From positions 1 to 64,000 of the IMG/VR virus record IMGVR_UViG_3300043418_000072: 64,000 nucleotides of DNA, one strand, 5' to 3'. Shown in pieces: positions 5,187 to 64,000 of this stretch (position 1 is the first letter of the stretch; each line of letters starts with the position of its first letter). A model generated the notes under the pieces. It saw nothing but the letters and a program-made list of their open reading frames with translations, was not told the origin of the DNA and searched no databases. Both the position numbers and the translations under genes were made by a program.

Positions 5187-5203
5187 TACATTAGTATCAA
5201 TTA

Positions 5204-5211: not shown

Positions 5212-5220
5212 GGAAATAAA

Positions 5221-44128: not shown

Positions 44129-44156
44129 ATTAAAAGCACTTTCGGGTGCTTTTAAT
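44129..44156 (+). terminator. Intrinsic terminator, probably bidirectional
   Basis: ATTAAAAGCAC-T-TTCG-G-GTGCTTTTAAT stem with UUCG loop and A/T tracts on both sides. Confidence 0.85.
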
Positions 44157-44186
44157 TTGACTCTTTCCTTTCCCTTTGTGTATAAT
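44157..44186 (+). promoter_or_regulatory. Near-consensus sigma70 promoter for the modification cluster, probably leaderless
   Basis: TTGACT (44157-44162), 18 nt, TATAAT (44181-44186). The ATG at 44193 is 6 nt later and has no SD. Confidence 0.75.
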
Positions 44187-44192
44187 TGTGTT

Positions 44193-44507
44193 ATGAGTAA
44201 CATACCTACGATTGTGGACCAAATTCGATTAGCCACTAACTATCAAAAGAACAAGCGCATACTACGGGAGCGCATCCAAACTGATCTGCATTTTGCACAT
44301 AATGGCGGTTTATTTAAAATCACTCCGGGCCTGATCTCTTTTGTAAAAGAATGGCCTGTTGACGAACTGTACATTGAAGATGTGTACGAGAATCCAATTC
44401 AAGTGGATAGACAGGTATTCTTAGTGCAAGCACAACAACATTACAGTCGAGTTATGAATGAATGGCATCAACAACATGCAGAACTTAAAAAGATTAGAAA
44501 AATCTAA
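44193..44507 (+). CDS. Hypothetical protein (start 44193)
   Basis: ORF; the upstream TTG start lies inside the -35 box. Confidence 0.65.
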   Translation: MSNIPTIVDQIRLATNYQKNKRILRERIQTDLHFAHNGGLFKITPGLISFVKEWPVDELYIEDVYENPIQVDRQVFLVQAQQHYSRVMNEWHQQHAELKKIRKI

Positions 44508-45303
44508 GGGCGTGTTATTGTTTGCATTTAACAATGCAGATACTGATTACATTAAGCTAACCAGCAACACTATTCGCTTGATTAAGCATAACCTCGGCTT
44601 GCCAGTTACGTTAGTAACGGGCTTAGATGAAGTAGTTGATTTTGAAGTTGATAACATAGTACGCATTGAATCACAAGGTGGCAACACACGTTACAGCACA
44701 GAGCTAGGTCAACGTGTACAGTGGCGAAACTTTGGTCGGTATATGGCCTACGAGCTTAGTCCATACGATGAAACTATTCTTATGGACACTGACTACCTTG
44801 TATTAGATAACAGTCTATTGACATATTTTGATACAACGTGGGACTACTTAATTCCACATCGTAATATTAATTTGGGACAAGATGAATTTGCGGATACCAT
44901 GGGCATGTACAGCTTGCCATTTATCTGGGCCACAGTTATCTTGTTTCGCAAAACAACCAAAGCAGAAACGCTATTTGATTTAGTGGGACGAGTGCAGCGT
45001 AATTACGATTACTATAAGATGTTATACAATATCCCTGCAACTAATTATCGTAACGATTATGCGTTTGCGATTGCAGATTATTTGGTTAACGGTTACCAGA
45101 CTGATAAACAAACGCAGTTACCACAGCCTTTATTAACTGCCACTGGGCAGCTACAAAGTATTAATAGGATTGGATCTTTACTGCACGTCAAAGACACTAA
45201 CGAAGGCTATGTTATCCCATTGGGTAATTTACATGTCCTGAGTAAAGGATATTTACTTAGTAACAACTTTAAAACATTTGTGGATCAGCACTGTGCAGCA
45301 TAA
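44476..45303 (+). CDS. GT-A fold glycosyltransferase (GT8-like)
   Basis: GVLLFAFN...SPYDETILMDTDYLV with intact DxD; late H..K motif. Confidence 0.7.
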   Translation: MQNLKRLEKSKGVLLFAFNNADTDYIKLTSNTIRLIKHNLGLPVTLVTGLDEVVDFEVDNIVRIESQGGNTRYSTELGQRVQWRNFGRYMAYELSPYDETILMDTDYLVLDNSLLTYFDTTWDYLIPHRNINLGQDEFADTMGMYSLPFIWATVILFRKTTKAETLFDLVGRVQRNYDYYKMLYNIPATNYRNDYAFAIADYLVNGYQTDKQTQLPQPLLTATGQLQSINRIGSLLHVKDTNEGYVIPLGNLHVLSKGYLLSNNFKTFVDQHCAA

Positions 45304-46135
45304 AGAACAACAGGGATTTTTAACTATTGCACAAAACGGCAATGCAGATTATCTGCGAATGGCCTACGTGCAAGCATTGAGTATTAAGGCAGTGACACCG
45401 GGTGCCAGGTATGCAGTTATTGTAGACGCAGCTACTATGGCACAAGTGTCAGAGCAACATCGCAAGGTGTTTGATTATGTAATTGAATTAACACATGATT
45501 ATTCAACTGGTACTGATTGGAAGTTAGCAAATGAATGGCAAGTATTTTGGCTTACTCCTTTTAAGGAAACGATCAAGCTGGAAGCAGACATCGTGGTTAC
45601 ACGGGACATGACACAGAGGTGGGACCTATACCGTATGCGTGATGTGGTATTGGGACTAGGATGCAGAAACTATCATGGCGACCAAGTGCCAAGTCCATAT
45701 CGAACATTGTTCGTAGACAATGAGTTACCTGATGTATATAATGGACTGATGTATTTTCGTTATAGTAAAACAGCATTAGAATTCTTTAAGGTCGCAAGAG
45801 AGCTGTTCCTTACGTGGGAGCAGGTTGGGGCAGAGTTTAAGCGAACAGCAACTACTCAGGCCACTACAGATTTCGTATATGCAGTGGCCTCTAACATTGT
45901 TGGTAGAGAGTTAACTACGTTACCCGGGGTTGGAACAAGTTTTGTACACATGAAGCCCGGTATTAATGGATGGCCGTCGGATACTGAATTTCATAGGGCA
46001 GTTAATGTAGTAGTAGATGCACCAGATATTAGAATCAATAATGTGCTGCAACTATTTCCGGTCCATTATCATTACAAAGACTTTATCACAGATGAGATAA
46101 TTAGAGATTATGAACGAGCTGCCGGAGTTAATTAA
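45278..46135 (+). CDS. GT-A fold glycosyltransferase paralogue
   Basis: GFLTIAQN...TPFKETIKLEADIV (ExD), VYNGLMYF, FVHMK, HYH. Aligns by eye with 44476. Start may be GTG 45293. Confidence 0.7.
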   Translation: MWISTVQHKEQQGFLTIAQNGNADYLRMAYVQALSIKAVTPGARYAVIVDAATMAQVSEQHRKVFDYVIELTHDYSTGTDWKLANEWQVFWLTPFKETIKLEADIVVTRDMTQRWDLYRMRDVVLGLGCRNYHGDQVPSPYRTLFVDNELPDVYNGLMYFRYSKTALEFFKVARELFLTWEQVGAEFKRTATTQATTDFVYAVASNIVGRELTTLPGVGTSFVHMKPGINGWPSDTEFHRAVNVVVDAPDIRINNVLQLFPVHYHYKDFITDEIIRDYERAAGVN

Positions 46136-46460
46136 AGCATTTGGTTTGATTGAACCAGAGGTTGCGCAAACCATTGAATATCGTTTATACTACGATGTAC
46201 ATGGTAATGCCCTGTACATGGGTATGGGTGATAGTAAAGGTACTAATTATATCACTATACCAAAATCAGTTTATGATAGAGCAACAGTACATAACCTAAA
46301 AGTTGTAAATGAACAGTTAATCACAATCGATGCTGGTACAATGTGGTTGCAGTTACGTAAATCAACAAGTGGGTACGCAGTAGTTAAGAACCATCCTGCG
46401 CTGCTAATAGAACAAGACGAAGAGTATACAGACATCGAATACTATGACAGAAATAATTGA
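46110..46460 (+). CDS. Hypothetical protein
   Basis: ORF coupled within the operon; no motif recognised. Confidence 0.6.
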   Translation: MNELPELIKAFGLIEPEVAQTIEYRLYYDVHGNALYMGMGDSKGTNYITIPKSVYDRATVHNLKVVNEQLITIDAGTMWLQLRKSTSGYAVVKNHPALLIEQDEEYTDIEYYDRNN

Positions 46461-47343
46461 CGTTGCAGACCTGGACTGCATCTTCCTTACATATGATGAA
46501 CCTAAAAAAGAAGAATTCTGGATTCAGATACAGAATGTCGTTCCTTGGGCCAAGCGGGTGGATGGCGTTAGCGGGAGCGATGCTGCACACAAAGCAGCGG
46601 CAAGAGCTAGTGACACGGACCGCTTCATTCTTATTGACGGAGACAACCTCCCCGATCCTTCTTTCTTTAACCGGCAACTTAGTATTGATGATACTAATCG
46701 TGATTGTGTATTTAGATGGAGAGCAAGGAATATTATAAATGGATTACAATATGGCAATGGTGGGATTTCGTGCTGGACTAGGAGCTTTGTCGAATCTATG
46801 CGCACACACGAAGCCACTGACGGTAGTCATGAGACACAAGTTGAATTCTGTTTCCATCCTCAATACTGGGCTATGGCCGACTGCTACAGTACCACGCATC
46901 CGAATGCCACTGCGTTCCAGGCTTGGCGTGCAGGATTTAGGGAAGGCGTTAAAATGTGTTTGGACCGTGGACGTAAACCAAGTTTATCTGATTTCAAAAA
47001 TAGCGTTGTTAGGCGAAACCTTGACAACTTATCTATCTGGCACAACGTGGGATCAGATGTGGAAAATGGACTGTGGGCAATGGCAGGTGCCCGCCAAGGT
47101 ACTTACAACACCATGCTCTCAGACTGGGACTACACAGAAGTCCAAGACTTCCAAAAGTTAAAAGACTATTGGGATAACACGGTACACAAGTTTGATGTTA
47201 TTGACTTTGTAAACTTATACAGCGTTGAATTGACGAGATGCTTGGACTTACCTATTATTGACTTGGACGAATACCAAAGTAAATTTTTCAAACATCACTA
47301 CAATAGTCAGTTTAAGAATAAGGGAATCATGTGCAGAGAATAA
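46444..47343 (+). CDS. GT-A fold glycosyltransferase (GT2-like)
   Basis: CIFLTYDEP...AAHKAAARASDTDRFILIDGDN with DxD; GNGG; AWRAGFREGVK. Confidence 0.7.
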   Translation: MTEIIDVADLDCIFLTYDEPKKEEFWIQIQNVVPWAKRVDGVSGSDAAHKAAARASDTDRFILIDGDNLPDPSFFNRQLSIDDTNRDCVFRWRARNIINGLQYGNGGISCWTRSFVESMRTHEATDGSHETQVEFCFHPQYWAMADCYSTTHPNATAFQAWRAGFREGVKMCLDRGRKPSLSDFKNSVVRRNLDNLSIWHNVGSDVENGLWAMAGARQGTYNTMLSDWDYTEVQDFQKLKDYWDNTVHKFDVIDFVNLYSVELTRCLDLPIIDLDEYQSKFFKHHYNSQFKNKGIMCRE

Positions 47344-47897
47344 AAGGCATGATAGTCATTGGTACTGCTCGCAGTGGTAGTCACATGACCTGCGACATGC
47401 TTTATAACGAGTCGCAGTTGCCTGAAAAACTTATACTAGGTGAAGTCACTGAGCTGCCTGATATAGCTGACAAGTTTGTGTATTGCAGCATTGTGCAAAA
47501 CTGGGTAAAGATTGCGCTAGCAGTAGACATTAGTTGGACAAGTGATTACTATGTGGTTAATTTACGCCGTAGAGACAAAGTAGCACAGTATCTAAGTTGG
47601 TGCGTGTTTAGGGCGCAAACACAGGCTAGCATAAGCAAACATTCGCCGGACTGGAATGACTATAAAGACTTGTTACCGTGGGAGTCGACTAAGGACGACA
47701 TAGAGCAATTTCTAATGGAACAATATTTGGACTTTGCAATTACACCAAATGAGATTGTCTATTACGAAGATATGATCAAGTCCTGCAAGACAACTAAGTT
47801 TAAGCAGAACCAATACCCGATCCCTCCCCAAGAGATAGTAACCAATTACACATTAGTTAAAAACATGTTAGAGAAATTTTCATATGACAACAGGTAA
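47331..47897 (+). CDS. Sulfotransferase-like protein (Stf0-like); start may be ATG 47349
   Basis: IVIGTARSGSH PAPS-binding loop, LRRRDKVAQYLS 3'-phosphate motif and YED. Confidence 0.6.
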   Translation: MQRIKGMIVIGTARSGSHMTCDMLYNESQLPEKLILGEVTELPDIADKFVYCSIVQNWVKIALAVDISWTSDYYVVNLRRRDKVAQYLSWCVFRAQTQASISKHSPDWNDYKDLLPWESTKDDIEQFLMEQYLDFAITPNEIVYYEDMIKSCKTTKFKQNQYPIPPQEIVTNYTLVKNMLEKFSYDNR

Positions 47898-49275
47898 GAG
47901 CGACTTTATGAGTGCAGCTGATGAGATGAAGGCCAACTTGGGCCCTGCTCTCTGTTTGGCTAAATGGCAACAAGTAAGTCTGCACCTACCAACTGGATTA
48001 AACAACAGTTGCTACCATCCACCATTGCACAAGATCGACCCAGAAGCCATTAAACTTAACCCTGGCGCACTGCATAACACTGAGCACAAAAAGCAACAGC
48101 GTGTGATCATGCTAAAGGATGAAAAGCCTAGCGAGTGCAGCTATTGCTGGAACATTGAAGCACATGATCAACTAAGCGACAGACATTACAGAAGCGGAGA
48201 GCCCTGGGCAGCAGAACACTATGACGAGATCAAAAATTCTACAGGATCCGAAGATACGATTCCAAGTTATGTGGAAGTCAATTTTAATCACGCTTGTAAC
48301 CTTAAGTGTAGTTATTGCAGCCCTCAGTTTAGCAGTAGTTGGGCTGATGAAGTTGCTAGGCACGGAGCATTTCCTACTAGTGTTCCCCATAATGACCCTG
48401 CTCATTTTACGGGTGTTCGACGACCAATCCCTGCTCGTGAAGACAACCCTTATGTTGATGCGTTTTGGGAGTGGTGGCCTGAACTGTACCCTAAACTTAA
48501 ACATTTTAGAATGACAGGCGGCGAGCCACTAATGGACAAGAACACTTACAAGGTGTTTGACTATGTGCTGGCCATGCCCAAGCCTGACCTGCACTTAAAC
48601 GTAACCAGTAACTTCAGTGTAGAGCCCAAGCTAATGGATCAGTACCTTGACTACGTTAAGCGATTGTGCGATACACAAATTGAACACTTCATGCAGTATG
48701 TTAGTTTAGATAGCGGTAACATGGAACAGGCTGAGTACATTCGACATGGCATGACAGCATCTCGTGTTCATAATAATGTGCAGCGTTACCTAACTGATAT
48801 TCCTTATCGCAACAGTCTCACATTCATTATCACAATGAATAATTTAAGCATCGTTGGCTTACAGGCGCAGCTGGATTGGATTCTGGATTTACGAAAACAG
48901 CATAGCACAACTTATCAACGTGTTTGGTTCGACACTCCGTTGTTACGCACACCTAGCTGGCAAAGCATCCAGATCATGCCATGGGTCTATGTCAAGCGTA
49001 TGGAAGATGTACTAAAATGGATGCAAGCAAATGCCGAAACAGCAGACAAACCATTTCAGGGTTTTAAGGACTACGAGATACAACGTATGGCTCGTGACAT
49101 AGAATGGATGAAGGAAGGTAGCACTCTTGACCCTGAATATGTTACACTGCAACGTGCTGACTTTTATCGCTTCTTTAATCACCACGATACGAGACGCGGC
49201 ACTGACTTTAAAACAACATTCCCGGAAATGAAAGAGTTCTGGGACGAATGTAGGTACCATGCCCAGAATCAATAA
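47884..49275 (+). CDS. Radical SAM protein (N-terminal twitch, subfamily A)
   Basis: CNLKCSYC, TGGEP, VTSN. N-terminal CLAKW...SCYH...CSYC. Confidence 0.88.
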   Translation: MTTGKSDFMSAADEMKANLGPALCLAKWQQVSLHLPTGLNNSCYHPPLHKIDPEAIKLNPGALHNTEHKKQQRVIMLKDEKPSECSYCWNIEAHDQLSDRHYRSGEPWAAEHYDEIKNSTGSEDTIPSYVEVNFNHACNLKCSYCSPQFSSSWADEVARHGAFPTSVPHNDPAHFTGVRRPIPAREDNPYVDAFWEWWPELYPKLKHFRMTGGEPLMDKNTYKVFDYVLAMPKPDLHLNVTSNFSVEPKLMDQYLDYVKRLCDTQIEHFMQYVSLDSGNMEQAEYIRHGMTASRVHNNVQRYLTDIPYRNSLTFIITMNNLSIVGLQAQLDWILDLRKQHSTTYQRVWFDTPLLRTPSWQSIQIMPWVYVKRMEDVLKWMQANAETADKPFQGFKDYEIQRMARDIEWMKEGSTLDPEYVTLQRADFYRFFNHHDTRRGTDFKTTFPEMKEFWDECRYHAQNQ

Positions 49276-50608
49276 CGAAACAGACCTAGAATACAAACGC
49301 AGAGTAATCGACATTAAGAGCGAAAGCTTCTGCGGAGCAAAATGGTACAACGCCACTATCTGGTTAGGTAGTGGTCAAACCACTAGTTGCCATCATCCGT
49401 TGCCACATGCAATCGATGTAAGCGAGCTATCATCTAACCCCAAAGCATTGCACAACACTACCAAGAAGAAAATGGAACGTGAGCAGATGCAAAAGGGAGA
49501 ACGTCCTGCAGGTTGTGAATACTGCTGGAAGATTGAAGATATGGGCAAAGACGCAGTAAGCGACCGTGTTTACAAAACAGTTATATATGACGATAAGGAT
49601 TTGAATTATGCTTTTAGTACCCCAGCCAGCACCGATGTGGATTTGCAAACTTTGGAAATTGCTTTCGACCGCACTTGTCAGTTTGCATGTAGCTACTGCA
49701 ATCCTGCTTTTAGCAGCACTTGGGTTAAAGACATTAGGAATAACGGGGCCTATAACGGATTGGTTAGTGACGGACGAAATCACTTTACTCATGCTCATGA
49801 TAGCTCTCAACTGTATCGCTTCGGTCAAGCTAATCCTTATGTGGACGCCTTTCACAAGTGGTGGGAAAGCGATCTCCACAGAACACTAAAGGAACTACGC
49901 ATTACTGGCGGCGAGCCGTTAATGTCAGGTGAGACTTGGAAGCTAATTGACTGGTTTAAGACTAATAACGGCAAGAGCAAGACACGTCTGGCTATTAACA
50001 GTAACTTAGGCACAGAGGTAGATATTGATCGTTTGCTCGATGCCATTGATGGAGTAGAAGTTGACTTGTACACTAGCAACGAATCTATTGGCTTGCAGTC
50101 TGAGTACATCCGTGATGGTATTAACTTTGGGGACTGGACTAACAACGTAGAGCGTTTACTGGCTAGTGGCAAGTTCCGTGGCCTGCATGTGATGTGTACT
50201 ATTAACGCACTATGTCTTACTAGCTTAGACAGCTTCCTTGAAATGTTGTTAGCATGGAAGAGTAGGTATGGTAAGGACTCGATTAACTTTTCGCTAAATA
50301 TTTTACGATTCCCAAGTTTTCAAAGCCCGTTGGTATTACCCGACGAACTACGCACCCAATACAGAACAAATCTCAGCAACTTCTATCAAGCTCACAAAGA
50401 CACTGGCGTGTGCCACGGATTTGAAATTGATCAATTGAAACGACTAATTGATTACCTTGATGTAATGATAACTCCACATGCAGGTGCGGCAGAGCAATCA
50501 GTGCTACAACAGGACTTTAAAAACTTCTTTGCACAGTACGATCAACGCAGGGGCAAAGACTTCTGCAACACATTCCCTGAGCTAGCAGCTTGGTATAATC
50601 AACTATAA
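49259..50608 (+). CDS. Radical SAM protein (N-terminal twitch, subfamily A)
   Basis: CQFACSYC, TGGEP, INSN. N-terminal FCGAKW...SCHH...CEYC. Confidence 0.88.
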   Translation: MPRINNETDLEYKRRVIDIKSESFCGAKWYNATIWLGSGQTTSCHHPLPHAIDVSELSSNPKALHNTTKKKMEREQMQKGERPAGCEYCWKIEDMGKDAVSDRVYKTVIYDDKDLNYAFSTPASTDVDLQTLEIAFDRTCQFACSYCNPAFSSTWVKDIRNNGAYNGLVSDGRNHFTHAHDSSQLYRFGQANPYVDAFHKWWESDLHRTLKELRITGGEPLMSGETWKLIDWFKTNNGKSKTRLAINSNLGTEVDIDRLLDAIDGVEVDLYTSNESIGLQSEYIRDGINFGDWTNNVERLLASGKFRGLHVMCTINALCLTSLDSFLEMLLAWKSRYGKDSINFSLNILRFPSFQSPLVLPDELRTQYRTNLSNFYQAHKDTGVCHGFEIDQLKRLIDYLDVMITPHAGAAEQSVLQQDFKNFFAQYDQRRGKDFCNTFPELAAWYNQL

Positions 50609-50640
50609 TTCACTATAATTCACTATAATTCACTATAATG
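50592..50640 (+). repeat. 10-bp tandem repeat (ACTATAATTC) spanning a stop-start junction
   Basis: Three exact units at 50602-50631, a partial unit ending in the ATG, and one degenerate upstream unit. Five TATAAT hexamers at a 10-bp period. Confidence 0.95.
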
Positions 50641-56525: not shown

Positions 56526-56546
56526 GCGCGATCCATTTATATACAA

Positions 56547-57092
56547 ATGATGTTTGTTAACGGTGACAGCTTTACATACGGGGAAGAACTACCACACGAC
56601 CAAAAACCGTGGCCACAGTTATTAGACTGCCCTGTTATGAATAGAGCTCAGCCGGGCTATAGCAATGATGCAATCGTTAAGTCTACGGTGGTTGCAGTAG
56701 AGAATAATTACCCAACCTATGCAATCATTGCTTGGACTACACCTAATAGGATAGAAGTAAACGGACAACACCTTACTCCAAGTAGTCATAGAAAGTATGG
56801 ATCGATTTGCGATCATGTATTCTTGGATTGGGACGAAGAATGGGCCATAACAAAGTTTTTAACGCAAGTGGTAATGTTAGATGCGTACTTGCGTGATCGC
56901 AATGTACCTTATGTATTTGTAAGAACGTTCGATGTTCCTAATTGCAAGGTAGGCAATTGGATACCGGGCAGTATGGTAGAATGGATGGGCGATTGCCCTA
57001 AAGGACCCGGCGGGCATCCGCTAGAGCTAGGTCATCAAAGAATAGCAGATAAAATAAATGAACATATTAGGCATCTCGGCTGGTTATCATGA
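56547..57092 (+). CDS. SGNH/GDSL-like hydrolase or acyltransferase paralogue
   Basis: VNGDSFTYG, NRAQPGYSNDAI and GHPLELGH. Confidence 0.65.
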   Translation: MMFVNGDSFTYGEELPHDQKPWPQLLDCPVMNRAQPGYSNDAIVKSTVVAVENNYPTYAIIAWTTPNRIEVNGQHLTPSSHRKYGSICDHVFLDWDEEWAITKFLTQVVMLDAYLRDRNVPYVFVRTFDVPNCKVGNWIPGSMVEWMGDCPKGPGGHPLELGHQRIADKINEHIRHLGWLS

Positions 57093-58545: not shown

Positions 58546-58745
58546 CTGACGCAACTAGTAGAAGTATTGCTAAGACTATTAGTTGGAGAGTAACTGGTAC
58601 CGCATCAACTTTATTGATATCGTATTTGGTACTTGGGAATCTTCAAATAGCTGGCGCAATAGCATCAACACAATTAGTAATTAATACTGTGTTATATTTT
58701 ATGCACGAACGTGCCTGGAATAAAATTAGATGGGGTAGAGAATGA
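58542..58745 (+). CDS. Small membrane protein (DUF2061-like)
   Basis: RSIAKTISWR...YFMHERAWNKIRWG. Confidence 0.8.
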   Translation: MTDATSRSIAKTISWRVTGTASTLLISYLVLGNLQIAGAIASTQLVINTVLYFMHERAWNKIRWGRE

Positions 58746-59164
58746 CTAAAAAGATTTTAATATTTGGGTTGCCGGGCAGTGGCAAAAGTACGCTAGCTAA
58801 ACCATTTGCAGAGCTAATTGGTGGTGTGTGGCTTAACGCAGATGCAGTTCGTGACGAATACAATGACTGGGATTTTACTCCCGAAGGTCGTATGCGTCAA
58901 GCAATGCGTATGAAATATCTAGCCGACGGCGTAGTTAAGGCCGGTAAGATTGCAGTAGCTGATTTTGTATGCCCTACTGAAGCAGCAAGAGCAGAATTTG
59001 ATGCTGAGTTTACAGTGTGGATGGACACTATCACCGAAGGTAGATTTGAAGACACTAATAAACTATTTGAAAAGCCTGCCTACTGTGATTATCATGTTAG
59101 CACTTGGTTTGATGATACACACAAGCAACTAGCAGAAGTAGTTGCAAAGTACATGAAGCATTAA
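58742..59164 (+). CDS. cysC: Adenylylsulfate (APS) kinase-like protein
   Basis: GLPGSGKST P-loop, LNADAVR, DWDFTPEGRMRQ and FEKP. Coupled to the DUF2061-like gene. Confidence 0.75.
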   Translation: MTKKILIFGLPGSGKSTLAKPFAELIGGVWLNADAVRDEYNDWDFTPEGRMRQAMRMKYLADGVVKAGKIAVADFVCPTEAARAEFDAEFTVWMDTITEGRFEDTNKLFEKPAYCDYHVSTWFDDTHKQLAEVVAKYMKH

Positions 59165-60279
59165 AGCGGAATGGCAAATCGTAGATTGTCAGTTAGTTCA
59201 CACCAAGCTGCATCCAAGAAGTCTTGGCTGTAGAATCGATTATAGTTGTAAGAGAGCACATCCTGCATTTCTTTAAGCATACGCTCTAACTGCTTGTCTG
59301 TCTTTTTGCAGATAGTTTCTAATACATCTGCAACAGCTTTTAGTCGCAGCACAGGATCCTCAATATCGTCGTAACTTTCGTCCCACCATTGGCTAAATGT
59401 TTCAAATCCGTATTCGCGTAAATACTTTAAGTTGTGAGCAGGCCCAACAAGTAAGAATGGCATTTGGCTCACAATAGGTTTGAATATCTTTTCAGTTAGG
59501 TGATGTTTACGATCCCAGAAACAAGTTTCGGTAACCACGTACACAAAACTCTCTTGAGTCTCTGGTACTGCACTTAACACAAAGCTATGATTAGGAATTG
59601 AATCCCGGTCTTTGTAATCAACACGTAACGGTAATGGTGCCGTTGAAATATTTGCAATGGCTTTGTTCGCTGCATCCCATGATATTAACCAATTTGATGC
59701 CGCAGATGATAAGTTGTCTACGTATGTTCCGCCATCTGGGCAAGTATCGTTATAACTAACATGCCCTTTGCTTAGGATATTGCGTTCGATTAGTTCACTA
59801 ATCAACAAACTTCTATAAACCCTTGAATTACTAGTGAGTCTATTAAATGTCACATACTTCTTTTTTATTGTTCTATCTACTGGTATTGTTAATCTGCTAT
59901 CGTAGCTGTATCCGCGGAACCAATCATGTGCGGCAAACACATGATGAAAGTAATACACAACCTCCCAACCGTAACGAGCACGAATCTCTTCAACGCCACT
60001 ACTTTCCTTTTCCGTAGTGACAAGAACAAAAGGGCCACTCATGTTATCTCTAATGTAGTCAAACAATCTAAAATTGTACGCACCATAGATAGGTTCTTGG
60101 TCATAAAAGATAAACAATGGGTCGCCGTTATTGGGCAAATGACTCATATCCTTTGCTAGCACTTCGATGTTTTCCGGTTGACTTGACCCAAATGGGTGTA
60201 GGTATAATACCCTTGGTTGTGCTACAATAGTAGACAAGAAGTGATAGATGTTTTCGTAATGACTGTTAAGATTATACAT
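59161..60279 (-). CDS. Putative glycosyltransferase (GT-B/GT10-like C-terminus)
   Basis: YVVTET...LTEKIFKPI...PFLLVG...LREYGFETF recalls the TEK motif of fucosyltransferase-like GT10 domains. Confidence 0.55.
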   Translation of the reverse strand: MYNLNSHYENIYHFLSTIVAQPRVLYLHPFGSSQPENIEVLAKDMSHLPNNGDPLFIFYDQEPIYGAYNFRLFDYIRDNMSGPFVLVTTEKESSGVEEIRARYGWEVVYYFHHVFAAHDWFRGYSYDSRLTIPVDRTIKKKYVTFNRLTSNSRVYRSLLISELIERNILSKGHVSYNDTCPDGGTYVDNLSSAASNWLISWDAANKAIANISTAPLPLRVDYKDRDSIPNHSFVLSAVPETQESFVYVVTETCFWDRKHHLTEKIFKPIVSQMPFLLVGPAHNLKYLREYGFETFSQWWDESYDDIEDPVLRLKAVADVLETICKKTDKQLERMLKEMQDVLSYNYNRFYSQDFLDAAWCELTDNLRFAIPL

Positions 60280-62725
60280 GTTTGACGTATTTTATTATGG
60301 CCGCAAGCCAAACCTATTTGAATTTGAACAATATGCGCCGAGCATAGAAGCAGCAGCGGCCAAGTGTGAAACTGGGTACTACTGGTATATTTATGGGGGC
60401 AACGATTACACTGGGTTTGATTTCAATTGGCGTCCTGCGCCGTGGGAACACAGCCATCTGCATGTATGGCCTAGTCAACATCAGCGATGCGGTGATGTAT
60501 TTCTTGCGCACGTAGATACCTATGCGCATAAACAATATCACTTTAGAGCTGAACAATCAATTAAACGTTTACCTTATCCTGCGGGATGGACAATACCCGA
60601 TTACATTGATCAGAACTCTGTGGACCTAACGTGGCACCCGGACACCACCGAAGGCAACTTCACTTATCACTTTCCTAGCCAACATCAAAGTGCAAGCGGC
60701 GTCTACTACACCATGTTGCATACAACTGGCATCAAGTTCGGTAGTGCGTTTACGGTTACAGCATTAGCAGACAAAACTCATTGGGTAGTCCCAGAAGAGA
60801 TTAACGAATCAACAGTTGATTTTAGTTGGCATCCAAATCCGCTTGATCCGCCTTACGAGTATCACTTCGGTAGTGACTACCAACAAAGCATTGGATTAAC
60901 TTACACAGTATCTGGCGCAACCAACATCAGCTTTGCGGGCCCAATGCCTACTCTCGGGTATCACAAATTAACTGCAATGCAAGTGCTGGATATTTTCTTC
61001 ATTGATAAAGGCAACCCGACTGCACAAGTTCGTTACGATAGACTTAACGAACTGCACAATGTCACGAAGGTGCGTTATGCTAACAGCATGATGGACACAA
61101 TCAAGCGATGTGTTGCACGAAGCAAGACCAATAAGTTTTGGGTAGTTAGCAGCGAGTATGACTACACTGGCTTTGACTTCCGTTGGCACGCCGAGCCATG
61201 GCAACAGTATATGACCCATGTGTTTCCAAGTCAGCACAACAAATGGAGTGACACATTCCTAATCAACAAGTGGGAATTCAATCGCCATGCAGAGTGGGCA
61301 AAAGATATAGAAGAGTTTCCTAACTTGAATTTTGTGCCTGACCAAAGTGTAGTTAAACCCGATACCAACTGCAACATGTACTTCGTAGATCACGGCAATC
61401 CCGAAAGCGATATTGATTACACTGCAATGTTAGCTATAGTTCCCGATCTAGTAAAAACACGCTTTGCAAACACCTACCTTGATACCTTTAAGCGTATCAT
61501 GCAAAACGCAGACACTGAGTATGTGTGGATTCTCAACAGCATCTGCGATTACTGGCTATTTGACTTCTCGTGGGAACCAGAGCCGTGGCAACGCGAAATG
61601 ATACACTGCTTCTCTAATGAGTCAGCATCGGTGATATCCAAAGATCAACGTGGCGACACATTCTACATACATGTTGAATCATTTAAAAAGCAAATGATTG
61701 AGCTGGAGTTACTGGATTGGTTTAATGTAATCAATTACATAGATGGGCACGAGGTAAAGCGTTATCCTGTACCAGCAGTATATTACAACTCGGACAACCT
61801 AATAGAAGCAATCAAGAATCATAACTTTACTACTCCGTATGCCTTGTTCACAAAGGACTCGCAACACAAAGGCATGATCGGAAATACCACATGCCTGTGG
61901 ACTGAGAAGGATCGTATTGCCATTGACGTTAGTGCAGACAAAAGCACCAGCTTGATTCCCCGCGATGTTAAGAAGTATATCAAGACTCAAGTATACGATT
62001 ACCCACACCTTGTGGAACATCCTCGCCTACGTAATATGCGGGCAGTGAAGGACTTGGACATTGTGTTTATCAGCAATGGCGAGCCAGACGAACAAAAATG
62101 GTTTGAGCATACTGAGTACATGAGTAACCGCGATGTAAAATGGATTCGTGGGGTTAATGGGCGTGTTGCTGCATATCAAGCCGCAGCTAATGCCAGCACA
62201 ACAGATTGGTTTCTAGCAGTGTTTGCCAAGCTAGAAGTAGTTGGCAATAGAGATATCTGGGAGTTCCGCCCGGACTATTGGCAAGGTCCCAAGCATTACA
62301 TCTTTAACGCACAGAATCCTGTCAATGGACTAGTATACGGACACCAAGGAATGATTGCCTACAATAAGAGCCTTGTTTTAGCAAATAACGACCCTGGAAT
62401 TGACTTTACCCTGTCACAACCGCACGAATCGGTGCCTATTCTTAGCGGGGTAGCACACTATAACCAAGACGCTTGGACCACATGGCGCACAGCCTTTAGA
62501 GAGGTGTTAAAGCTGCGATTGTTTATGGACACACAGCCTACACTGGAAACTGAGCATAGACTGGAAATATGGCGCACAGTTGCGGCAGGCAACTACAGCA
62601 ACTACAGCATCGATGGTGCTAACGATGCCGTTGCGTACTATGAAGAAGTACAGGGTGATTTAGCAAAGCTACAGTTGAGCTTTGAATGGGCGTGGCTACG
62701 TGCCCGTTACGATGCTAAATACTGA
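60278..62725 (+). CDS. Multi-module protein of tandem degenerate GT-A-like units
   Basis: Five DFxWxP..W...HxF repeats. C-terminal unit aligns with 46444 (DIVFISNGEP...AAYQAAANASTTDWF...AWTTWRTAFREVLK) but lacks DxD. Confidence 0.6.
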   Translation: MFDVFYYGRKPNLFEFEQYAPSIEAAAAKCETGYYWYIYGGNDYTGFDFNWRPAPWEHSHLHVWPSQHQRCGDVFLAHVDTYAHKQYHFRAEQSIKRLPYPAGWTIPDYIDQNSVDLTWHPDTTEGNFTYHFPSQHQSASGVYYTMLHTTGIKFGSAFTVTALADKTHWVVPEEINESTVDFSWHPNPLDPPYEYHFGSDYQQSIGLTYTVSGATNISFAGPMPTLGYHKLTAMQVLDIFFIDKGNPTAQVRYDRLNELHNVTKVRYANSMMDTIKRCVARSKTNKFWVVSSEYDYTGFDFRWHAEPWQQYMTHVFPSQHNKWSDTFLINKWEFNRHAEWAKDIEEFPNLNFVPDQSVVKPDTNCNMYFVDHGNPESDIDYTAMLAIVPDLVKTRFANTYLDTFKRIMQNADTEYVWILNSICDYWLFDFSWEPEPWQREMIHCFSNESASVISKDQRGDTFYIHVESFKKQMIELELLDWFNVINYIDGHEVKRYPVPAVYYNSDNLIEAIKNHNFTTPYALFTKDSQHKGMIGNTTCLWTEKDRIAIDVSADKSTSLIPRDVKKYIKTQVYDYPHLVEHPRLRNMRAVKDLDIVFISNGEPDEQKWFEHTEYMSNRDVKWIRGVNGRVAAYQAAANASTTDWFLAVFAKLEVVGNRDIWEFRPDYWQGPKHYIFNAQNPVNGLVYGHQGMIAYNKSLVLANNDPGIDFTLSQPHESVPILSGVAHYNQDAWTTWRTAFREVLKLRLFMDTQPTLETEHRLEIWRTVAAGNYSNYSIDGANDAVAYYEEVQGDLAKLQLSFEWAWLRARYDAKY

Positions 62726-63565
62726 ATGCGAATTAATGAAATTATAACCGAAGCAACTAACCCCGATATTCATCACTCAGAGTTCAAGCACGAGCAAGAG
62801 ATTGGGGGACTACTGTATAAGGCCGAAGCAGATAACAACTCAGGCTACGGTACTACACTAGTCATTACAGTATACAATGGTAGAAAACAAATTGCGTCGA
62901 CTGAATTCATTATAGACGAAGACCACAATTCACTAGTTAGTGCAAACACCTGGGTTTTGCCCAAGTACCAAGATCGGGGTGTAGCTACCACAATGTATGC
63001 TTATGCTAAGATGTTGGGCAACGACATTGTTCCGAGCAGGATACAAACAGATCAGGGCAACAGCATGTGGCGCTCATGGAATCAATCCAAACAAAGCAAA
63101 CACATTCTGCCCCGTGGTCACAAAGGCTACAACGAAGATACAGTGGGCCAATCTCTTGCTGAACTATTTGAGCCTGGTAAAGACTACAAATGGAGTTTCA
63201 CTGGCAGTGAAGAAGCAGTAGCAGTATTCCACATTGGCGAAGTGCCCTATCAATTCCATGCCTATACCTATCCCGGAGAGAATGGTACGTGGGAAGTGGA
63301 GTTTAAAAATGCCGAACGTGGACGCGGCCGCACTACTAAATTTGGATTAACTGGGACTGGTAATTCAGCTGAAGTAATGTCCACTATCACTGATATTATG
63401 CGTGAGTTCTTGCAGCGTTATCAAGGTAAAGTAACAGCACTCACATTCACAGCAGACGAACAGTCACGTCAATCGTTGTATGCTAGAATGGCCAAACGTT
63501 TATTACCAACGTGGCAGTTAACACAAACCGATAAGCAGTTTATATTAACTGCGCCTGCTAACTAA
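62726..63565 (+). CDS. Putative virion-packaged protein with GNAT acetyltransferase-like domain
   Basis: N-terminal MRINEIITEA; VLPKYQDRGVATTMY acetyl-CoA motif A; QTDQGNSMW; TAAATA box (62716-62721) 4 nt before the ATG. Confidence 0.6.
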   Translation: MRINEIITEATNPDIHHSEFKHEQEIGGLLYKAEADNNSGYGTTLVITVYNGRKQIASTEFIIDEDHNSLVSANTWVLPKYQDRGVATTMYAYAKMLGNDIVPSRIQTDQGNSMWRSWNQSKQSKHILPRGHKGYNEDTVGQSLAELFEPGKDYKWSFTGSEEAVAVFHIGEVPYQFHAYTYPGENGTWEVEFKNAERGRGRTTKFGLTGTGNSAEVMSTITDIMREFLQRYQGKVTALTFTADEQSRQSLYARMAKRLLPTWQLTQTDKQFILTAPAN

Positions 63566-64000
63566 AGAACTTTTTGATTGTGCGAACCACATGTTCGACT
63601 TCGCTATCAGTCATTTCGGGGTAGATAGGCAAGCTCATACATTCGCGTGTATATGCACTTGATTCTCTAAAGAATTCATTCATATAGTCGGTGTATTCGT
63701 AACCAACTGGCAATTCAAACAATGGCTTGTCGTAGTGTATCTTTGTTTCGATGCCTGCGTCACGCATATACTGCATCAATGCGTGTCGGTTACTTAGGCG
63801 AATAACAAACTTGTGCCATGCGTGTACAACATCGTCATTGGGCAGTAGCACATCTACGTAAGACACAAGGTTCTCAATATAGTACTCAGCAATGGCTGTT
63901 CTACGCTTTTGCCAATCATCAAAGTGCTTGAGCTTCACTAACATTTGAGCACAATCACTTTCACTCATTCTACTGTTAGTCCCGGGGATTTGATGCCCGC
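63558..64000 (-). CDS. DegT/DnrJ/EryC1/StrS sugar aminotransferase, 3' part (open to the window end)
   Basis: The frame stays open past 63968 (GHQIPGTNSRMSE...). Motifs LVKLKHFDDW..RR, HAWHKF, GIETKIHY and MSLPIYPEM. Confidence 0.85.
   Translation of the reverse strand, partial: GHQIPGTNSRMSESDCAQMLVKLKHFDDWQKRRTAIAEYYIENLVSYVDVLLPNDDVVHAWHKFVIRLSNRHALMQYMRDAGIETKIHYDKPLFELPVGYEYTDYMNEFFRESSAYTRECMSLPIYPEMTDSEVEHVVRTIKKFFS

What the first reader, a model, noticed from the sequence alone, without database searches (positions are those of the whole stretch)
44157..64000. ~20 kb phage-encoded tailoring pathway: glycosyltransferases, radical SAM array, sulfation, carbamoylation, acylation and amino-sugar synthesis
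Seen: directly after the tail-fibre terminator, one sigma70 promoter leads into a chain of overlapping genes. These are three GT-A enzymes, a sulfotransferase-like gene, five radical SAM genes, two SGNH proteins, a NodU-type carbamoyltransferase, DUF2061 and APS kinase. A GT10-like gene, a multi-GT protein and a DegT aminotransferase follow. Known: this enzyme mix resembles Nod-factor or aminoglycoside tailoring clusters. Giant viruses (PBCV-1, Mimivirus) and some mycobacteriophages glycosylate their virions with their own enzymes. Inference: the phage builds a heavily decorated glycan on its virion, the host surface or its DNA. I know of no characterised phage pathway combining all these activities.
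Basis: partly seen in the sequence, partly recalled or inferred. Interest (0 to 1): 0.85.

Follow-up and report, generated by a model that had tools for sequence, protein, structure and literature searches.

The report
Jumbo-phage glycan-tailoring island with radical SAM array
An uncultivated giant phage, and over a hundred related metagenomic contigs, carry a conserved ~21 kb block of soluble sugar-building and sugar-decorating enzymes, including five different radical SAM enzymes of an unstudied family; its product and target are unknown and it has no characterised counterpart.

Summary
The gene block is real. It begins at a terminator-like hairpin and a near-consensus sigma70-type promoter (44131-44186), and 18 tightly packed + strand genes follow. 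It runs past the window end to about 65,617 on the contig, where a DegT aminotransferase and an NDP-hexose 4,6-dehydratase lie.

Firm calls:
- five radical SAM enzymes, all NCBIfam NF033640 (N-terminal twitch domain), with every Fe-S cysteine invariant
- a carbamoyltransferase
- DUF2061
- a short kinase whose best match is APS kinase
- DegT

Fold-level support: the 815-aa protein is a chain of GT-A-like modules, and 46444 is its GT2-like relative with an intact DGD motif.

Motif-level support only: GT-A pair 44458/45278, sulfotransferase-like 47331, the SGNH-like pair, and "GT10-like" 59161.

The island's core is syntenic in over 100 related phage contigs and partly in Ralstonia phage RsoM2USA. 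The same enzyme mix recurs in Bacteroidota chromosomes, and the multi-class radical SAM array recurs in a Bacteriovoracaceae chromosome.

No membrane-bound export or lipid-carrier enzymes are present, and the neighbouring ThyA is a canonical thymidylate synthase. I therefore favour a cytoplasmic glycan built on a soluble acceptor, most plausibly a virion protein, but the target is unproven.

The parts
44131..44186 (+). Terminator-like hairpin (44131-44155), then a sigma70-type promoter: TTGACT 44157-62, 18-nt spacer, TATAAT 44181-86
   Evidence: Read directly. Best promoter match in the region, 11/12. One of three strict matches in 64 kb; the other two lie inside long ORFs. TTGAC-type boxes lie upstream of the same gene in relatives.
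44193..44507 (+). Small conserved protein (104 aa from ATG 44193), function unknown
   Evidence: 37-74% identical in relatives. The ATG is conserved. No Pfam or NCBIfam hit. A homolog sits at the same position in RsoM2USA.
44458..45303 (+). GT-A-like (GT8-like motifs) putative glycosyltransferase, family A1
   Evidence: Invariant D110-x-D112. Paralog of 45278 (hhalign 97.5%). Atlas neighbours are weakly linked to PF11051 and PF03407. No Pfam or PDB sequence hit.
45278..46135 (+). Second GT-A-like paralog, family A2
   Evidence: Invariant E102-x-D104 and an H-x-K-P motif. Hits phrog_1903, function unknown. hhalign to A1.
46110..46460 (+). Small conserved protein (116 aa), function unknown
   Evidence: 28-41% identical in relatives. 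No family hit.
46444..47343 (+). GT2-like glycosyltransferase, family A3, with an intact DGD motif
   Evidence: 75% mean column identity, with invariant D65-G66-D67-N68. hhalign 99.5% to the C-terminal domain of the 815-aa protein, whose model matches GT-A enzymes. At least 8000 database relatives, all unnamed.
47331..47897 (+). Sulfotransferase-like protein (motifs only), lineage-specific insertion
   Evidence: Motifs GTARSGSH and RRRDKVAQYLSW. Found only in the window's nearest relatives and L042. Homologs carry no Pfam hit. hhalign to a Pfam-positive bacterial sulfotransferase-like protein gives only 22.9%.
47884..49275 (+). Radical SAM enzyme 1 (N-terminal twitch domain, NF033640)
   Evidence: E 1.2e-89. 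Invariant CxxxCxxC and four twitch cysteines. Forms its own clade.
49259..50608 (+). Radical SAM enzyme 2 (NF033640)
   Evidence: E 3.2e-87. 51% identical to the RsoM2USA ortholog.
50638..51954 (+). Radical SAM enzyme 3 (NF033640), the class commonest in bacteria
   Evidence: E 2e-123. SPASM hit at residues 42-105. Tree.
51941..53149 (+). Radical SAM enzyme 4 (NF033640)
   Evidence: E 1e-99. Alignment.
53142..54446 (+). Radical SAM enzyme 5 (NF033640), the most conserved class (68-88% across non-identical relatives)
   Evidence: E 2.1e-84. Identities.
54433..54642 (+). 69-aa ORF, present in few relatives, doubtful
   Evidence: Seen in 4 of 81 loci. No family hit.
54635..55723 (+). Conserved orphan-fold protein (family A5), always between the radical SAM array and the carbamoyltransferase
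   Evidence: Present in 59 of 62 loci. AF2 pLDDT 90, pTM 0.87. No PDB match, best E 0.26. Only uncharacterised phage proteins in BFVD.
55701..56525 (+). SGNH/GDSL-like protein (GDS and GYSND motifs), accessory
   Evidence: Motifs read directly. Weak DUF6071 hit. Present in 23 of 62 loci and co-varies with the kinase.
56547..57092 (+). Second, shorter SGNH-like paralog, accessory
   Evidence: Paralog of 55701, E 8e-12. DUF6071 E 4e-5, below cutoff.
57058..58545 (+). NodU/CmcH-family carbamoyltransferase
   Evidence: Carbam_trans_C 160 bits and Carbam_trans_N 122 bits. 63-92% identical across 79 non-identical phage loci. 46% to RsoM2USA.
58542..58745 (+). DUF2061 small membrane protein, accessory
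   Evidence: Pfam E 1e-21. The only hydrophobic segment in the block.
58742..59164 (+). Short P-loop kinase, best match APS kinase, accessory
   Evidence: APS_kinase 32.8 bits against a 21.1 cutoff, matching only profile positions 4-92 of 152. NCBIfam equivalog cutoffs are not met.
59161..60279 (-).
   Evidence: Alignment A4. No PDB or Pfam hit. Family of 12,627 clusters without Pfam coverage.
60278..62725 (+). 815-aa protein: five tandem GT-A-like half-modules, the fifth forming the start of a complete GT2-like C-terminal domain that lacks DxD
   Evidence: AF2 pLDDT 87. Foldseek matches K4 chondroitin polymerase, Mimivirus R699, heparosan synthase 2, LH3 and LARGE1 at E 2e-5 to 2e-3. Internal repeats. 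DGD is replaced by FAK.
62726..63565 (+). 279-aa protein, function unknown, lineage-specific
   Evidence: Seen in 3 loci only. Weak DUF6934 hit.
63558..64000 (-). C-terminal part of a DegT/DnrJ/EryC1 sugar aminotransferase. The gene runs to contig position 64667, followed by an NDP-hexose 4,6-dehydratase (64649-65617, minus strand) outside the window
   Evidence: Translation. Full gene L002:16501-17610 scores 264 bits for DegT. The dehydratase hits Epimerase and GDP_Man_Dehyd. Best NCBIfam matches are PseC/ArnB and dTDP-glucose 4,6-dehydratase, below equivalog cutoffs.

Best explanation
This is a conserved, modular island of soluble enzymes that builds and tailors a glycan in the infected cell's cytoplasm, most plausibly on a phage structural protein such as the tail fibres encoded just upstream.

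**Shown**
- The gene content.
- The intact catalytic motifs of the five radical SAM enzymes.
- The conserved order of the island across a large phage clade.
- The absence of predicted membrane-spanning proteins apart from the 67-aa DUF2061.

**Inferred steps**
1. A host NDP-hexose is converted by the 4,6-dehydratase and the DegT aminotransferase into an NDP-4-amino-4,6-dideoxyhexose.
2. The GT8-like pair, the GT2-like 46444 and the 815-aa multi-module protein assemble sugars on a soluble acceptor.
3. The five anciently diverged twitch-domain radical SAM enzymes each abstract a hydrogen from an unactivated carbon. Each has a four-cysteine site predicted to hold an auxiliary 4Fe-4S cluster, spaced as I recall for BtrN. 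The chemistry could be oxidation, epimerisation, or C-C or C-methyl bond formation.
4. The carbamoyltransferase adds an O-carbamoyl group from carbamoyl phosphate and ATP.
5. In some lineages, SGNH-like proteins, a short P-loop kinase and, in this phage, a sulfotransferase-like protein add or remove further groups.

The orphan-fold protein 54635 is a conserved partner of the radical SAM and carbamoyltransferase module.

**My split of belief**
- Glycoconjugate pathway: about 0.8.
- Acceptor is a virion protein: about 0.35-0.4.
For: - **Enzyme identities:**
- **Radical SAM array:** all seven Fe-S cysteines and the GGEP motif are invariant across the five classes. The five classes sit in the same order in nearly all relatives. 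Each class is a separate, supported clade.
- **Glycosyltransferase modules:** GT-A fold for the 815-aa protein; 46444 is homologous to it and keeps DGD.
- **Conservation:** core genes are present in 45-59 of 62 well-covered loci. Base composition matches the rest of the genome.
- **Position:** the order tail fibre, small protein, two GT-A-like genes, GT2-like gene, radical SAM is conserved in relatives and in distant RsoM2USA.
- **Bacterial parallels:** bacterial loci combine the same radical SAM family with carbamoyltransferase, GT1/GT2, sulfotransferase, GDSL and epimerase genes.
- **Cytoplasmic setting:** no predicted membrane segment except in DUF2061.
- **Against DNA as the target:** canonical thymidylate synthase next to DHFR.
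Against: - No experiment or sequence feature identifies the acceptor. Adjacency to tail-fibre genes may only reflect an insertion hot spot at a module boundary.
- Several enzyme calls rest on motifs alone: the GT8-like pair, the sulfotransferase-like gene, the SGNH-like pair and 59161.
- The 815-aa protein lacks DxD in its complete domain, and its other modules are truncated half-domains, so it may not be catalytic.
- The modules are separable. L109 has the GT and amino-sugar genes without the radical SAM and carbamoyl genes. RsoM2USA splits them about 95 kb apart.
- A Bacteriovoracaceae chromosome has the radical SAM array with no glycosyltransferase or carbamoyltransferase detected within 10 kb; several neighbours have no Pfam hit.
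- No member of NF033640 has a known substrate.
Confidence: 0.45

Rival explanations
1. The block is not one pathway. It is two or three independent modules that sit together at a variable region between the structural and nucleotide-metabolism modules. The modules would be a GT set tied to tail fibres, a radical SAM, 54635 and carbamoyltransferase set, and an amino-sugar set. Their products could differ.
For: - L109 and L110 have the GT module but no radical SAM genes within the stretch fetched; L109 also shows the amino-sugar genes and lacks 54635, the carbamoyltransferase and 59161.
- RsoM2USA has the two parts about 95 kb apart.
- The multi-class radical SAM array occurs in a bacterial chromosome with no glycosyltransferase or carbamoyltransferase detected nearby.
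- There are at least four transcription units on two strands.
- The accessory genes come and go.
Against: - In most of the 62 well-covered loci all core modules are contiguous and in the same order.
- Bacteroidota loci also combine this radical SAM family with carbamoyltransferase, GT, sulfotransferase and GDSL genes, which argues for a functional link.
Confidence: 0.25
2. The island makes a free, soluble or lipid-linked small molecule, such as an aminoglycoside-like or otherwise decorated glycoside, rather than decorating a macromolecule.
For: - All enzymes are soluble.
- The mix parallels natural-product tailoring sets (my knowledge of butirosin, nebramycin and saxitoxin clusters): DegT-type aminotransferase, BtrN-like twitch radical SAM, NodU/CmcH-family carbamoyltransferase, sulfotransferase, GDSL and APS kinase.
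- A bacterial counterpart carries an SxtJ-like gene next to its carbamoyltransferase and a UbiA-GT1-GDSL fusion.
- The N-terminal twitch region aligns weakly with the BtrN twitch domain.
Against: - No scaffold-forming enzyme (cyclitol synthase, PKS or NRPS) is seen.
- The 815-aa protein resembles polymerising two-domain GTs.
- The GT module keeps a strict position after the tail-fibre genes.
- No exporter is present.
Confidence: 0.15
3. The island remodels the host envelope (LPS, capsule or exopolysaccharide) during infection, for example to block superinfection or to stop progeny sticking to debris, as has been proposed for cyanophage LPS gene clusters.
For: - Large clusters of LPS genes and sporadic carbamoyltransferase genes are known in cyanomyoviruses, with function unknown (PMC3037559).
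- A sigma70-type promoter would allow early expression by host RNA polymerase.
- Bacterial homologous cassettes look like surface-glycan loci, with GT2, PMT_2 and ABC transporter genes.
Against: - No initiating phosphoglycosyltransferase, flippase, polymerase, ligase or transporter was identified, and there is no membrane segment except the 67-aa DUF2061.
- The phage would have to plug into host machinery at every membrane step.
Confidence: 0.1
4. The island hypermodifies phage DNA with a decorated sugar to evade restriction.
For: - Phage-encoded GTs commonly glycosylate DNA (cited in PMC12619734).
- The promoter is of an early type.
- The island abuts ThyA and DHFR.
Against: - The ThyA is a canonical thymidylate synthase (top PDB hits E 1e-88, all thymidylate synthases) and is paired with DHFR.
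- No hydroxymethylase, DNA-base kinase or DNA-binding domain was found in the island.
- The short kinase is accessory, present in 25 of 62 loci.
- The rest of the 354-kb genome was not examined.
Confidence: 0.07

Closest known systems
Virus-encoded virion glycosylation systems (chlorovirus PBCV-1, Mimivirus fibril glycans with the R141 dehydratase and L136 aminotransferase, mycobacteriophage capsid/tail-tube glycosylation)
   Same: - The virus carries its own soluble glycosyltransferases.
- As in Mimivirus (my knowledge), it pairs a 4,6-dehydratase with a DegT-type aminotransferase for a 4-amino-6-deoxy sugar.
- A Mimivirus protein (R699) is among the best structural matches of the 815-aa protein.
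- No lipid-carrier or export machinery is present.
   Different: - None of those systems is known to include radical SAM enzymes, a carbamoyltransferase or sulfation genes.
- Glycosylation of the virion is not shown here.
- The GT families here have no Pfam model.
LPS-type gene clusters and 'Nol-like' carbamoyltransferases of T4-like cyanomyoviruses and pelagimyophage HTVC008M
   Same: - Large myophages carry blocks of sugar-metabolism genes and NodU/CmcH-family carbamoyltransferases of unknown role.
   Different: - The carbamoyltransferases are only 27-30% identical.
- The radical SAM search of the phage collection returned no cyanophage records.
- Cyanophage clusters are sporadic, whereas this island is near-universal in its clade.
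NCBIfam NF033640, twitch domain-containing radical SAM proteins; structurally characterised twitch/SPASM enzymes such as BtrN, MoaA, BlsE and viperin
   Same: - All five proteins score far above the family cutoff.
- They have CxxxCxxC plus a four-cysteine site spaced C-x18-C-x40-C-x2-C, close to the BtrN twitch spacing as I recall it.
- The twitch region aligns weakly with BtrN residues 184-258.
   Different: - The twitch domain is N-terminal, not C-terminal.
- No solved structure or known substrate exists for the family. The best PDB matches are viperin and an unnamed radical SAM protein at E about 1e-6, over the core only.
- Five to eight different classes act side by side.
Bacteroidota chromosomal cassettes (L126 Crocinitomicaceae, L150, L152) and the Bacteriovoracaceae radical SAM array (L125/L192)
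   Same: - L126 combines three N-twitch radical SAMs, a carbamoyltransferase, an SxtJ-like small protein, a sulfotransferase, GDSL proteins, a GT1 domain and an epimerase/dehydratase.
- L192 has eight radical SAMs, and their members are sister to each of the five phage classes.
   Different: - The bacterial cassette has a membrane UbiA-GT1-GDSL fusion and a PhyH dioxygenase.
- tblastn (E<=1e-4) found no homolog of the phage GT-A families, 54635 or the 815-aa protein in the genuinely bacterial loci.
- The bacterial carbamoyltransferases are only about 30% identical.
- None of these loci is characterised either.
Ralstonia phage RsoM2USA (the only cultured phage with clear orthologs)
   Same: - Its order is tail-fibre-like gene, 44193-like, two GT-A-like genes, a GT2-like gene, a radical SAM (47884 class, 37%) and a GT2-like domain gene.
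- A second locus holds a radical SAM (49259 class, 51%), an SGNH-like gene and a carbamoyltransferase (46%).
   Different: - It has only two radical SAM genes and two separate loci.
- No 54635, 59161 or full 815-aa homolog was detected in the two RsoM2USA regions compared (41.5 and 18.9 kb).
- All these genes are annotated as hypothetical and are not discussed in the paper.

Membership tests
Radical SAM superfamily / NCBIfam NF033640 (N-terminal twitch radical SAM) | CxxxCxxC motif binding the SAM-cleaving 4Fe-4S cluster | tested here: met
   C156, C160 and C163 (50638 numbering) are invariant in all five classes and 25 sequences.
Radical SAM superfamily / NCBIfam NF033640 (N-terminal twitch radical SAM) | Family HMM score above the curated cutoff (170 bits) | tested here: met
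   284-412 bits for all five.
Radical SAM superfamily / NCBIfam NF033640 (N-terminal twitch radical SAM) | N-terminal twitch (half-SPASM) domain with cysteines for an auxiliary cluster | tested here: met
   C42, C61, C102 and C105 are invariant. Pfam SPASM hits lie at the N-terminus of three of the five. Weak alignment to the BtrN twitch domain.
Radical SAM superfamily / NCBIfam NF033640 (N-terminal twitch radical SAM) | SAM cleavage activity and a defined substrate | not testable with these tools
   Needs anaerobic enzyme assays. No characterised member was found.
NodU/CmcH carbamoyltransferase family | Carbam_trans_N and Carbam_trans_C domains above the Pfam cutoffs | tested here: met
   122.4 and 160.1 bits against cutoffs of 24 and 27. 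The best stretch of the N domain covers only profile positions 110-345 of 346.
NodU/CmcH carbamoyltransferase family | Orthology to NodU proper (NCBIfam equivalog cutoff 1000 bits) | tested here: not met
   136 bits. It is a family member, not a NodU ortholog.
GT-A fold glycosyltransferases (GT2/GT8-like) | Match to a curated GT family model | tested here: not met
   No Pfam, NCBIfam or PDB sequence hit for 44458, 45278, 46444 or 60278.
GT-A fold glycosyltransferases (GT2/GT8-like) | GT-A fold | tested here: met
   Met for the 815-aa protein: Foldseek probabilities 0.97-0.99 to K4 chondroitin polymerase, R699 and GT2 enzymes. 46444 inherits this by homology. Not modelled for 44458 and 45278; only a weak Atlas lead exists.
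GT-A fold glycosyltransferases (GT2/GT8-like) | DxD metal/nucleotide-sugar motif | tested here: inconclusive
   Present and invariant in 46444 (DGD) and 44458 (DxD). It is ExD in 45278. It is absent from the 815-aa C-terminal domain, where FAK replaces it.
GT10-type fucosyltransferases (for 59161-60279) | Family HMM or GT-B fold | tested here: not met
   No Pfam hit in 31 orthologs or in 49 distant relatives. No PDB profile hit.
GT10-type fucosyltransferases (for 59161-60279) | Conserved E...(Y/H)-x-T-E-K donor-binding motif | tested here: inconclusive
   H260, T262, E263 and K264 are invariant. The resemblance to the GT10 motif is from memory only.
Sulfotransferases (for 47331-47897) | Family HMM; PAPS-binding 5'-PSB and 3'-PB motifs | tested here: inconclusive
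   No HMM hit. Motifs GTARSGSH and RRRDKVAQYLSW are present. hhalign to a Pfam-positive bacterial protein aligns both motifs, but at only 22.9% probability.
SGNH/GDSL hydrolases (55701, 56547) | Blocks I (GDS), III (GxND) and V (DxxH); family HMM | tested here: inconclusive
   GDSF and GYSND are present. Block V is unclear. Only sub-threshold DUF6071 hits were found.
APS kinase (58742-59164) | Family HMM and a full-length fold including the APS-binding part | tested here: inconclusive
   Pfam APS_kinase 32.8 bits, above the 21.1 cutoff, but only profile positions 4-92 of 152 match. The protein is 140 aa. All NCBIfam cutoffs are missed.
DegT/DnrJ/EryC1 sugar aminotransferases | Family HMM | tested here: met
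   264 bits for the full gene on the contig. No equivalog cutoff is met, so the sugar is unspecified.
Lipid-carrier-dependent surface polysaccharide loci (O-antigen/capsule) | Initiating phosphoglycosyltransferase, Wzx/Wzy or ABC transporter, membrane proteins | tested here: not met
   No such Pfam hits. No hydrophobic segment except in DUF2061.
Phage DNA hypermodification systems | Pyrimidine hydroxymethylase or other base-activating enzyme linked to the GTs | tested here: not met
   The neighbouring ThyA is a canonical thymidylate synthase next to DHFR. Only the island and its flanks were examined.
Virus-encoded virion glycosylation systems | Glycan demonstrably attached to virion proteins | not testable with these tools
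   Needs virion glycoproteomics.

The most novel reading that the evidence does not exclude
The ordered five-class array of N-terminal-twitch radical SAM enzymes, with the orphan-fold protein 54635 and the carbamoyltransferase, is a self-contained multi-step radical pathway that has not been described. It would be shared between an abundant clade of jumbo phages and Bdellovibrionota or Bacteroidota. In the phage it would install a new kind of heavily rearranged, carbamoylated sugar or other modification on virion components. That would make it the first radical-SAM-dependent virion modification system.
Probability: 0.25. Interest if true: 0.85.

Novelty: new variant of a known kind. Interest (0 to 1): 0.66.

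Why it matters
- Virus-encoded glycosylation is known from a few systems, and it affects host recognition, immune recognition and particle stability.
- This island would add radical SAM chemistry, carbamoylation and possibly sulfation to that repertoire.
- The phage clade is common in metagenomes. One island protein family alone has at least 8000 database clusters.
- The island gives genomic context to three large protein families with no known function: NF033640 radical SAM enzymes, the 59161 family with about 12,600 clusters, and the 54635 orphan fold.
- It points to a cultured model, Ralstonia phage RsoM2USA, in which the function can be tested.

Tried and rejected
- **DNA similarity:** megablast of the island against 50,697 phage records found nothing.
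- **PDB sequence and profile searches:** single-sequence and profile searches for 44458, 45278, 46444, 59161, 54635 and 60278 gave nothing usable.
- **PHROGs:** no informative hits for the unknown genes.
- **Atlas:** nothing for 54635 and 46444.
- **Large homolog search with the 46444 family:** it saturated with 8000 unnamed close relatives and gave no annotation.
- **59161 family:** a profile search of 1.84 billion representatives showed a huge family, but Pfam scans of 49 diverse members were blank.
- **47331:** the homolog search found only close unnamed relatives.
- **Collagen-type glycosylation idea:** LH3 and R699 were among the fold hits, so I checked whether the upstream fibre proteins are collagen-like. 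39939-41519 is poly-glycine without Gly-X-Y repeats, so I dropped the idea.
- **'Moraphage' paper (PMC12619734):** it describes a different lineage and does not mention radical SAM or carbamoyltransferase genes.
- **T4-type late promoter search (TATAAATA):** none near the island.
- **MAG loci:** three loci that seemed to show the whole island in bacteria (L113, L117, L118) are phage contigs binned into MAGs, and I excluded them.
- **First attempt to seed the genome scan:** using all five radical SAM classes failed because no block was conserved enough.

Full report
**Origin of the window**

The window equals positions 1-64000 of IMG/VR contig IMGVR_UViG_3300043418_000072, which is 354,098 bp long. 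It is a jumbo myophage.
- It has a baseplate wedge protein 36% identical to those of Atu_ph07, Phosso, SCTP-2 and the Salmonella, Xanthomonas and Yersinia jumbo phages.
- It also encodes a baseplate hub/lysozyme, a 3992-aa ORF and tail-fibre-like proteins.
- No phage record matches the island at DNA level.
- GC content in the island (0.41-0.45) matches the rest of the window, so it is not a recent foreign insert.

**Check of the observation**

The stop of the tail-fibre-like gene 43132-44127 is followed by a hairpin with a T-run (44131-44155). Then come TTGACT, an 18-nt spacer and TATAAT (44157-44186).
- This is the top-scoring promoter match in the region.
- It is one of three strict matches in the whole window; the other two lie inside long ORFs.
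- The overall number of promoter-like sites is only about 2 sd above shuffles, so the consensus match alone carries little weight.
- Added support: relatives have TTGAC-type boxes at the same place, and the ATG at 44193 is conserved. That ATG, not the TTG at 44157, is the gene start.

From 44193 to 59164 there are 18 + strand ORFs with overlaps or gaps of at most 29 nt. After that the strands alternate:
- 59161-60279 is on the minus strand;
- 60278-63565 is on the + strand and starts 2 nt inside the divergent gene;
- DegT is on the minus strand.

There are therefore at least four transcription units, not one.

The block continues beyond the window:
- DegT, 369 aa, to 64667;
- an NDP-hexose 4,6-dehydratase-like SDR at 64649-65617;
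- then thymidylate synthase and DHFR.

**Gene identities: firm**
- Five radical SAM proteins, all in NCBIfam NF033640 at 284-412 bits against a cutoff of 170.
- A carbamoyltransferase with both Pfam domains.
- DUF2061.
- A 140-aa P-loop kinase whose best hit is APS kinase. It is above the Pfam cutoff but covers only the first 60% of the model, and it misses every NCBIfam cutoff.
- DegT.

**Gene identities: fold level**
- The AlphaFold model of the 815-aa protein has pLDDT 87.
- Its best PDB matches are the two-domain GT-A polymerases K4 chondroitin polymerase and heparosan synthase 2, Mimivirus R699, LH3, LARGE1 and many GT2 enzymes.
- Profile comparison shows five tandem copies of a GT-A-like half-module, each with a motif like FDFSWHPxPW. 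The fifth copy forms the first ~90 residues of one complete C-terminal domain.
- That complete domain is homologous to 46444 at 99.5% probability.
- 46444 keeps an invariant DGD. The 815-aa protein has FAK at the same place.

**Gene identities: motif level only**
- 44458 and 45278 are paralogs (hhalign 97.5%). They have invariant DxD and ExD motifs and a weak Atlas link to PF11051 and PF03407.
- 47331 has sulfotransferase-like PAPS-binding motifs, but no HMM support and only a 22.9% hhalign match to a Pfam-positive bacterial protein.
- 55701 and 56547 have GDS and GxND blocks and sub-threshold DUF6071 hits.
- 59161 has an invariant H-x-T-E-K motif, with no HMM or PDB match, in a family of 12,627 clusters without Pfam coverage.

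54635-55723 lies between the radical SAM array and the carbamoyltransferase in 59 of 62 loci.
- Its model is confident: pLDDT 90, pTM 0.87.
- It has no PDB match; the best E-value is 0.26.
- It matches only uncharacterised phage proteins in BFVD, including one from Atu_ph07.

**The radical SAM array**
- The five proteins are 21-32% identical to each other.
- In an alignment of the five classes from several phages, the CxxxCxxC cysteines, the GGEP motif and four N-terminal cysteines (C-x18-C-x40-C-x2-C) are invariant. All five therefore look active and are predicted to carry an auxiliary 4Fe-4S cluster with four cysteine ligands.
- That spacing resembles the twitch domain of BtrN as I recall it. 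The profile aligns that region weakly to BtrN residues 184-258.
- No solved structure or characterised member of the family turned up.
- The five classes occur in the same order in nearly all relatives, and some phages have extra divergent copies.
- In a maximum-likelihood tree each class is a separate supported clade, so the array is ancient rather than a recent tandem duplication.
- A sixth paralog lies at 7278-8510 on the minus strand.

**Conservation**
- Scans of IMG/VR gave 79 non-identical loci with the carbamoyltransferase at 63-92% identity, and 30 more through 45278. Many come from contigs of 200-374 kb.
- Among 62 loci with at least 6 kb on both sides, the five radical SAM classes are present in 51-59, 54635 in 59, and the 815-aa protein in 58.
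- 59161 is present in 45, and DegT and the dehydratase in 46-49. The last two are limited by the length of flank fetched.
- The accessory genes are less frequent: SGNH-like proteins in 23 and 14, the kinase in 25 and DUF2061 in 16.
- The kinase co-varies with SGNH-like 55701: both 20, one only 8, neither 34.
- 47331 and 62726 occur only in the closest relatives.
- Upstream, the order tail fibre, 44193, 44458, 45278, 46110, 46444, radical SAM is conserved.
- The island is modular. L109 has the GT and amino-sugar genes without the radical SAM and carbamoyl genes.
- RsoM2USA is the only cultured phage with clear orthologs. It has tail fibre, 44193-like, two GT-A-like genes, a GT2-like gene, one radical SAM and a GT2-like domain gene at 216-222 kb. 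It has a second radical SAM, an SGNH-like gene and the carbamoyltransferase at 123-128 kb.
- Its paper does not discuss these genes.

**Bacterial counterparts**
- Three 'MAG' loci with the whole island (L113, L117, L118) also carry the phage tail-fibre genes. They are binned phage contigs and I excluded them.
- In the 16 loci from bacterial genome records that I sampled (two of them, L117 and L118, proved to be the binned phage contigs above), neighbours of the radical SAM gene are enriched in more radical SAM/SPASM proteins (15 of 130) and GT2 (6).
- A Crocinitomicaceae chromosome (L126) combines three such radical SAMs with a carbamoyltransferase, an SxtJ-like small protein, a sulfotransferase (Sulfotransfer_3/Stf0), GDSL proteins, a UbiA-GT1-GDSL fusion, a PhyH dioxygenase and an epimerase/dehydratase.
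- L150, L152 and L151 share the radical SAM plus carbamoyltransferase pairing.
- A Bacteriovoracaceae chromosome (L125/L192) has eight radical SAMs in a row next to rplU, rpmA, obg and lgt. Its members are sister to each of the five phage classes. No glycosyltransferase or carbamoyltransferase was detected within 10 kb.

**What it most likely does**
- The dehydratase and DegT pair predicts an NDP-4-amino-4,6-dideoxyhexose. The exact sugar is unspecified because no equivalog cutoff is met.
- Several GT-A-like proteins predict assembly of an oligosaccharide.
- The carbamoyltransferase predicts O-carbamoylation.
- The radical SAM enzymes predict chemistry at unactivated carbons.
- No cluster protein other than the 67-aa DUF2061 has a hydrophobic segment. 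No lipid-carrier transferase, flippase, polymerase or transporter was identified, which argues against a host-surface polysaccharide.
- The neighbouring ThyA is a canonical thymidylate synthase beside DHFR, and no base-activating enzyme is present, which argues against DNA hypermodification. Only the island and its flanks were examined.
- A soluble acceptor remains. The conserved position right after the tail-fibre genes, kept even in distant RsoM2USA, makes a virion protein the best guess, but this is inference from position only.
- A free small molecule and independent modules remain live rivals.

**Comparison with what is known**
- Virus-encoded virion glycosylation (chloroviruses, Mimivirus, mycobacteriophages) and cyanophage LPS-type clusters with 'Nol-like' carbamoyltransferases are the closest kinds of system.
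- I found none that combines these with a radical SAM array, and no paper describing this island.
- I rate it a new variant of a known kind.
- The radical SAM, 54635 and carbamoyltransferase module could prove to be something more novel.

Noticed in passing
window 7278-8510 (-): A sixth N-terminal-twitch radical SAM paralog (410 aa, CNLACRMC at residue 129) lies 36 kb from the array among minus-strand genes. hhalign probability to the family alignment is 99.9%.
   Followed up: partly
window 25798-37776 (+): A single 3992-aa ORF sits within the baseplate and tail-fibre region. It was not analysed.
   Followed up: no
window 39939-41519 (+): A protein made largely of poly-glycine runs, with a (G/D)n tail and no PHROG or Pfam hit. 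It explains the GC spike (0.507) and GC skew at 40-42 kb.
   Followed up: partly
window 5179-5218: A perfect palindrome carries two facing TATAAATA boxes next to the start of the 2682-5168 (-) gene. These are the only TATAAATA sites in the window.
   Followed up: no
L113, L117, L118 (genome contigs): Contigs deposited in bacterial MAGs (Legionellales SP228; Haliscomenobacter EUL_031, 183 kb and 148 kb) carry part or all of the island in phage order; L117 also has the tail-fibre genes. They are phage contigs binned as bacteria.
   Followed up: yes
L127, L131, L135, L139, L144, L147 and others (Elusimicrobia MAG MJ-2014_bin-0981): Dozens of ~40%-identical N-twitch radical SAM copies are spaced about 2.4 kb apart on about 15 contigs of one MAG. 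This is an unexplained massive expansion.
   Followed up: no
L125 / L192 6055-18051 (Bacteriovoracaceae UBA6144): A chromosomal array of eight N-twitch radical SAM genes lies next to rplU, rpmA, obg, rsfS and lgt. Its members are sister to each of the five phage classes.
   Followed up: partly
window 59161-60279 (-) family: This protein belongs to a family of 12,627 clusters (at 50% identity) with E<=1e-3. None of 49 diverse members sampled has a significant Pfam hit (none above a family cutoff). Some members are doubled, at 740-1018 aa.
   Followed up: partly
window 51941 and 53142 (L190 4941, 6157): The public gene calls start radical SAM genes 4 and 5 at downstream ATGs (51998, 53214). That cuts off the first invariant twitch cysteine, so the longer ORFs are the better models.
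   Followed up: yes
window 55701-56525 and 58742-59164, across 62 related loci: The SGNH-like protein and the short 'APS-kinase-like' P-loop kinase co-vary strongly (both 20, one only 8, neither 34). The putative sulfotransferase is nearly absent from those loci, so the kinase may not serve sulfation.
   Followed up: partly
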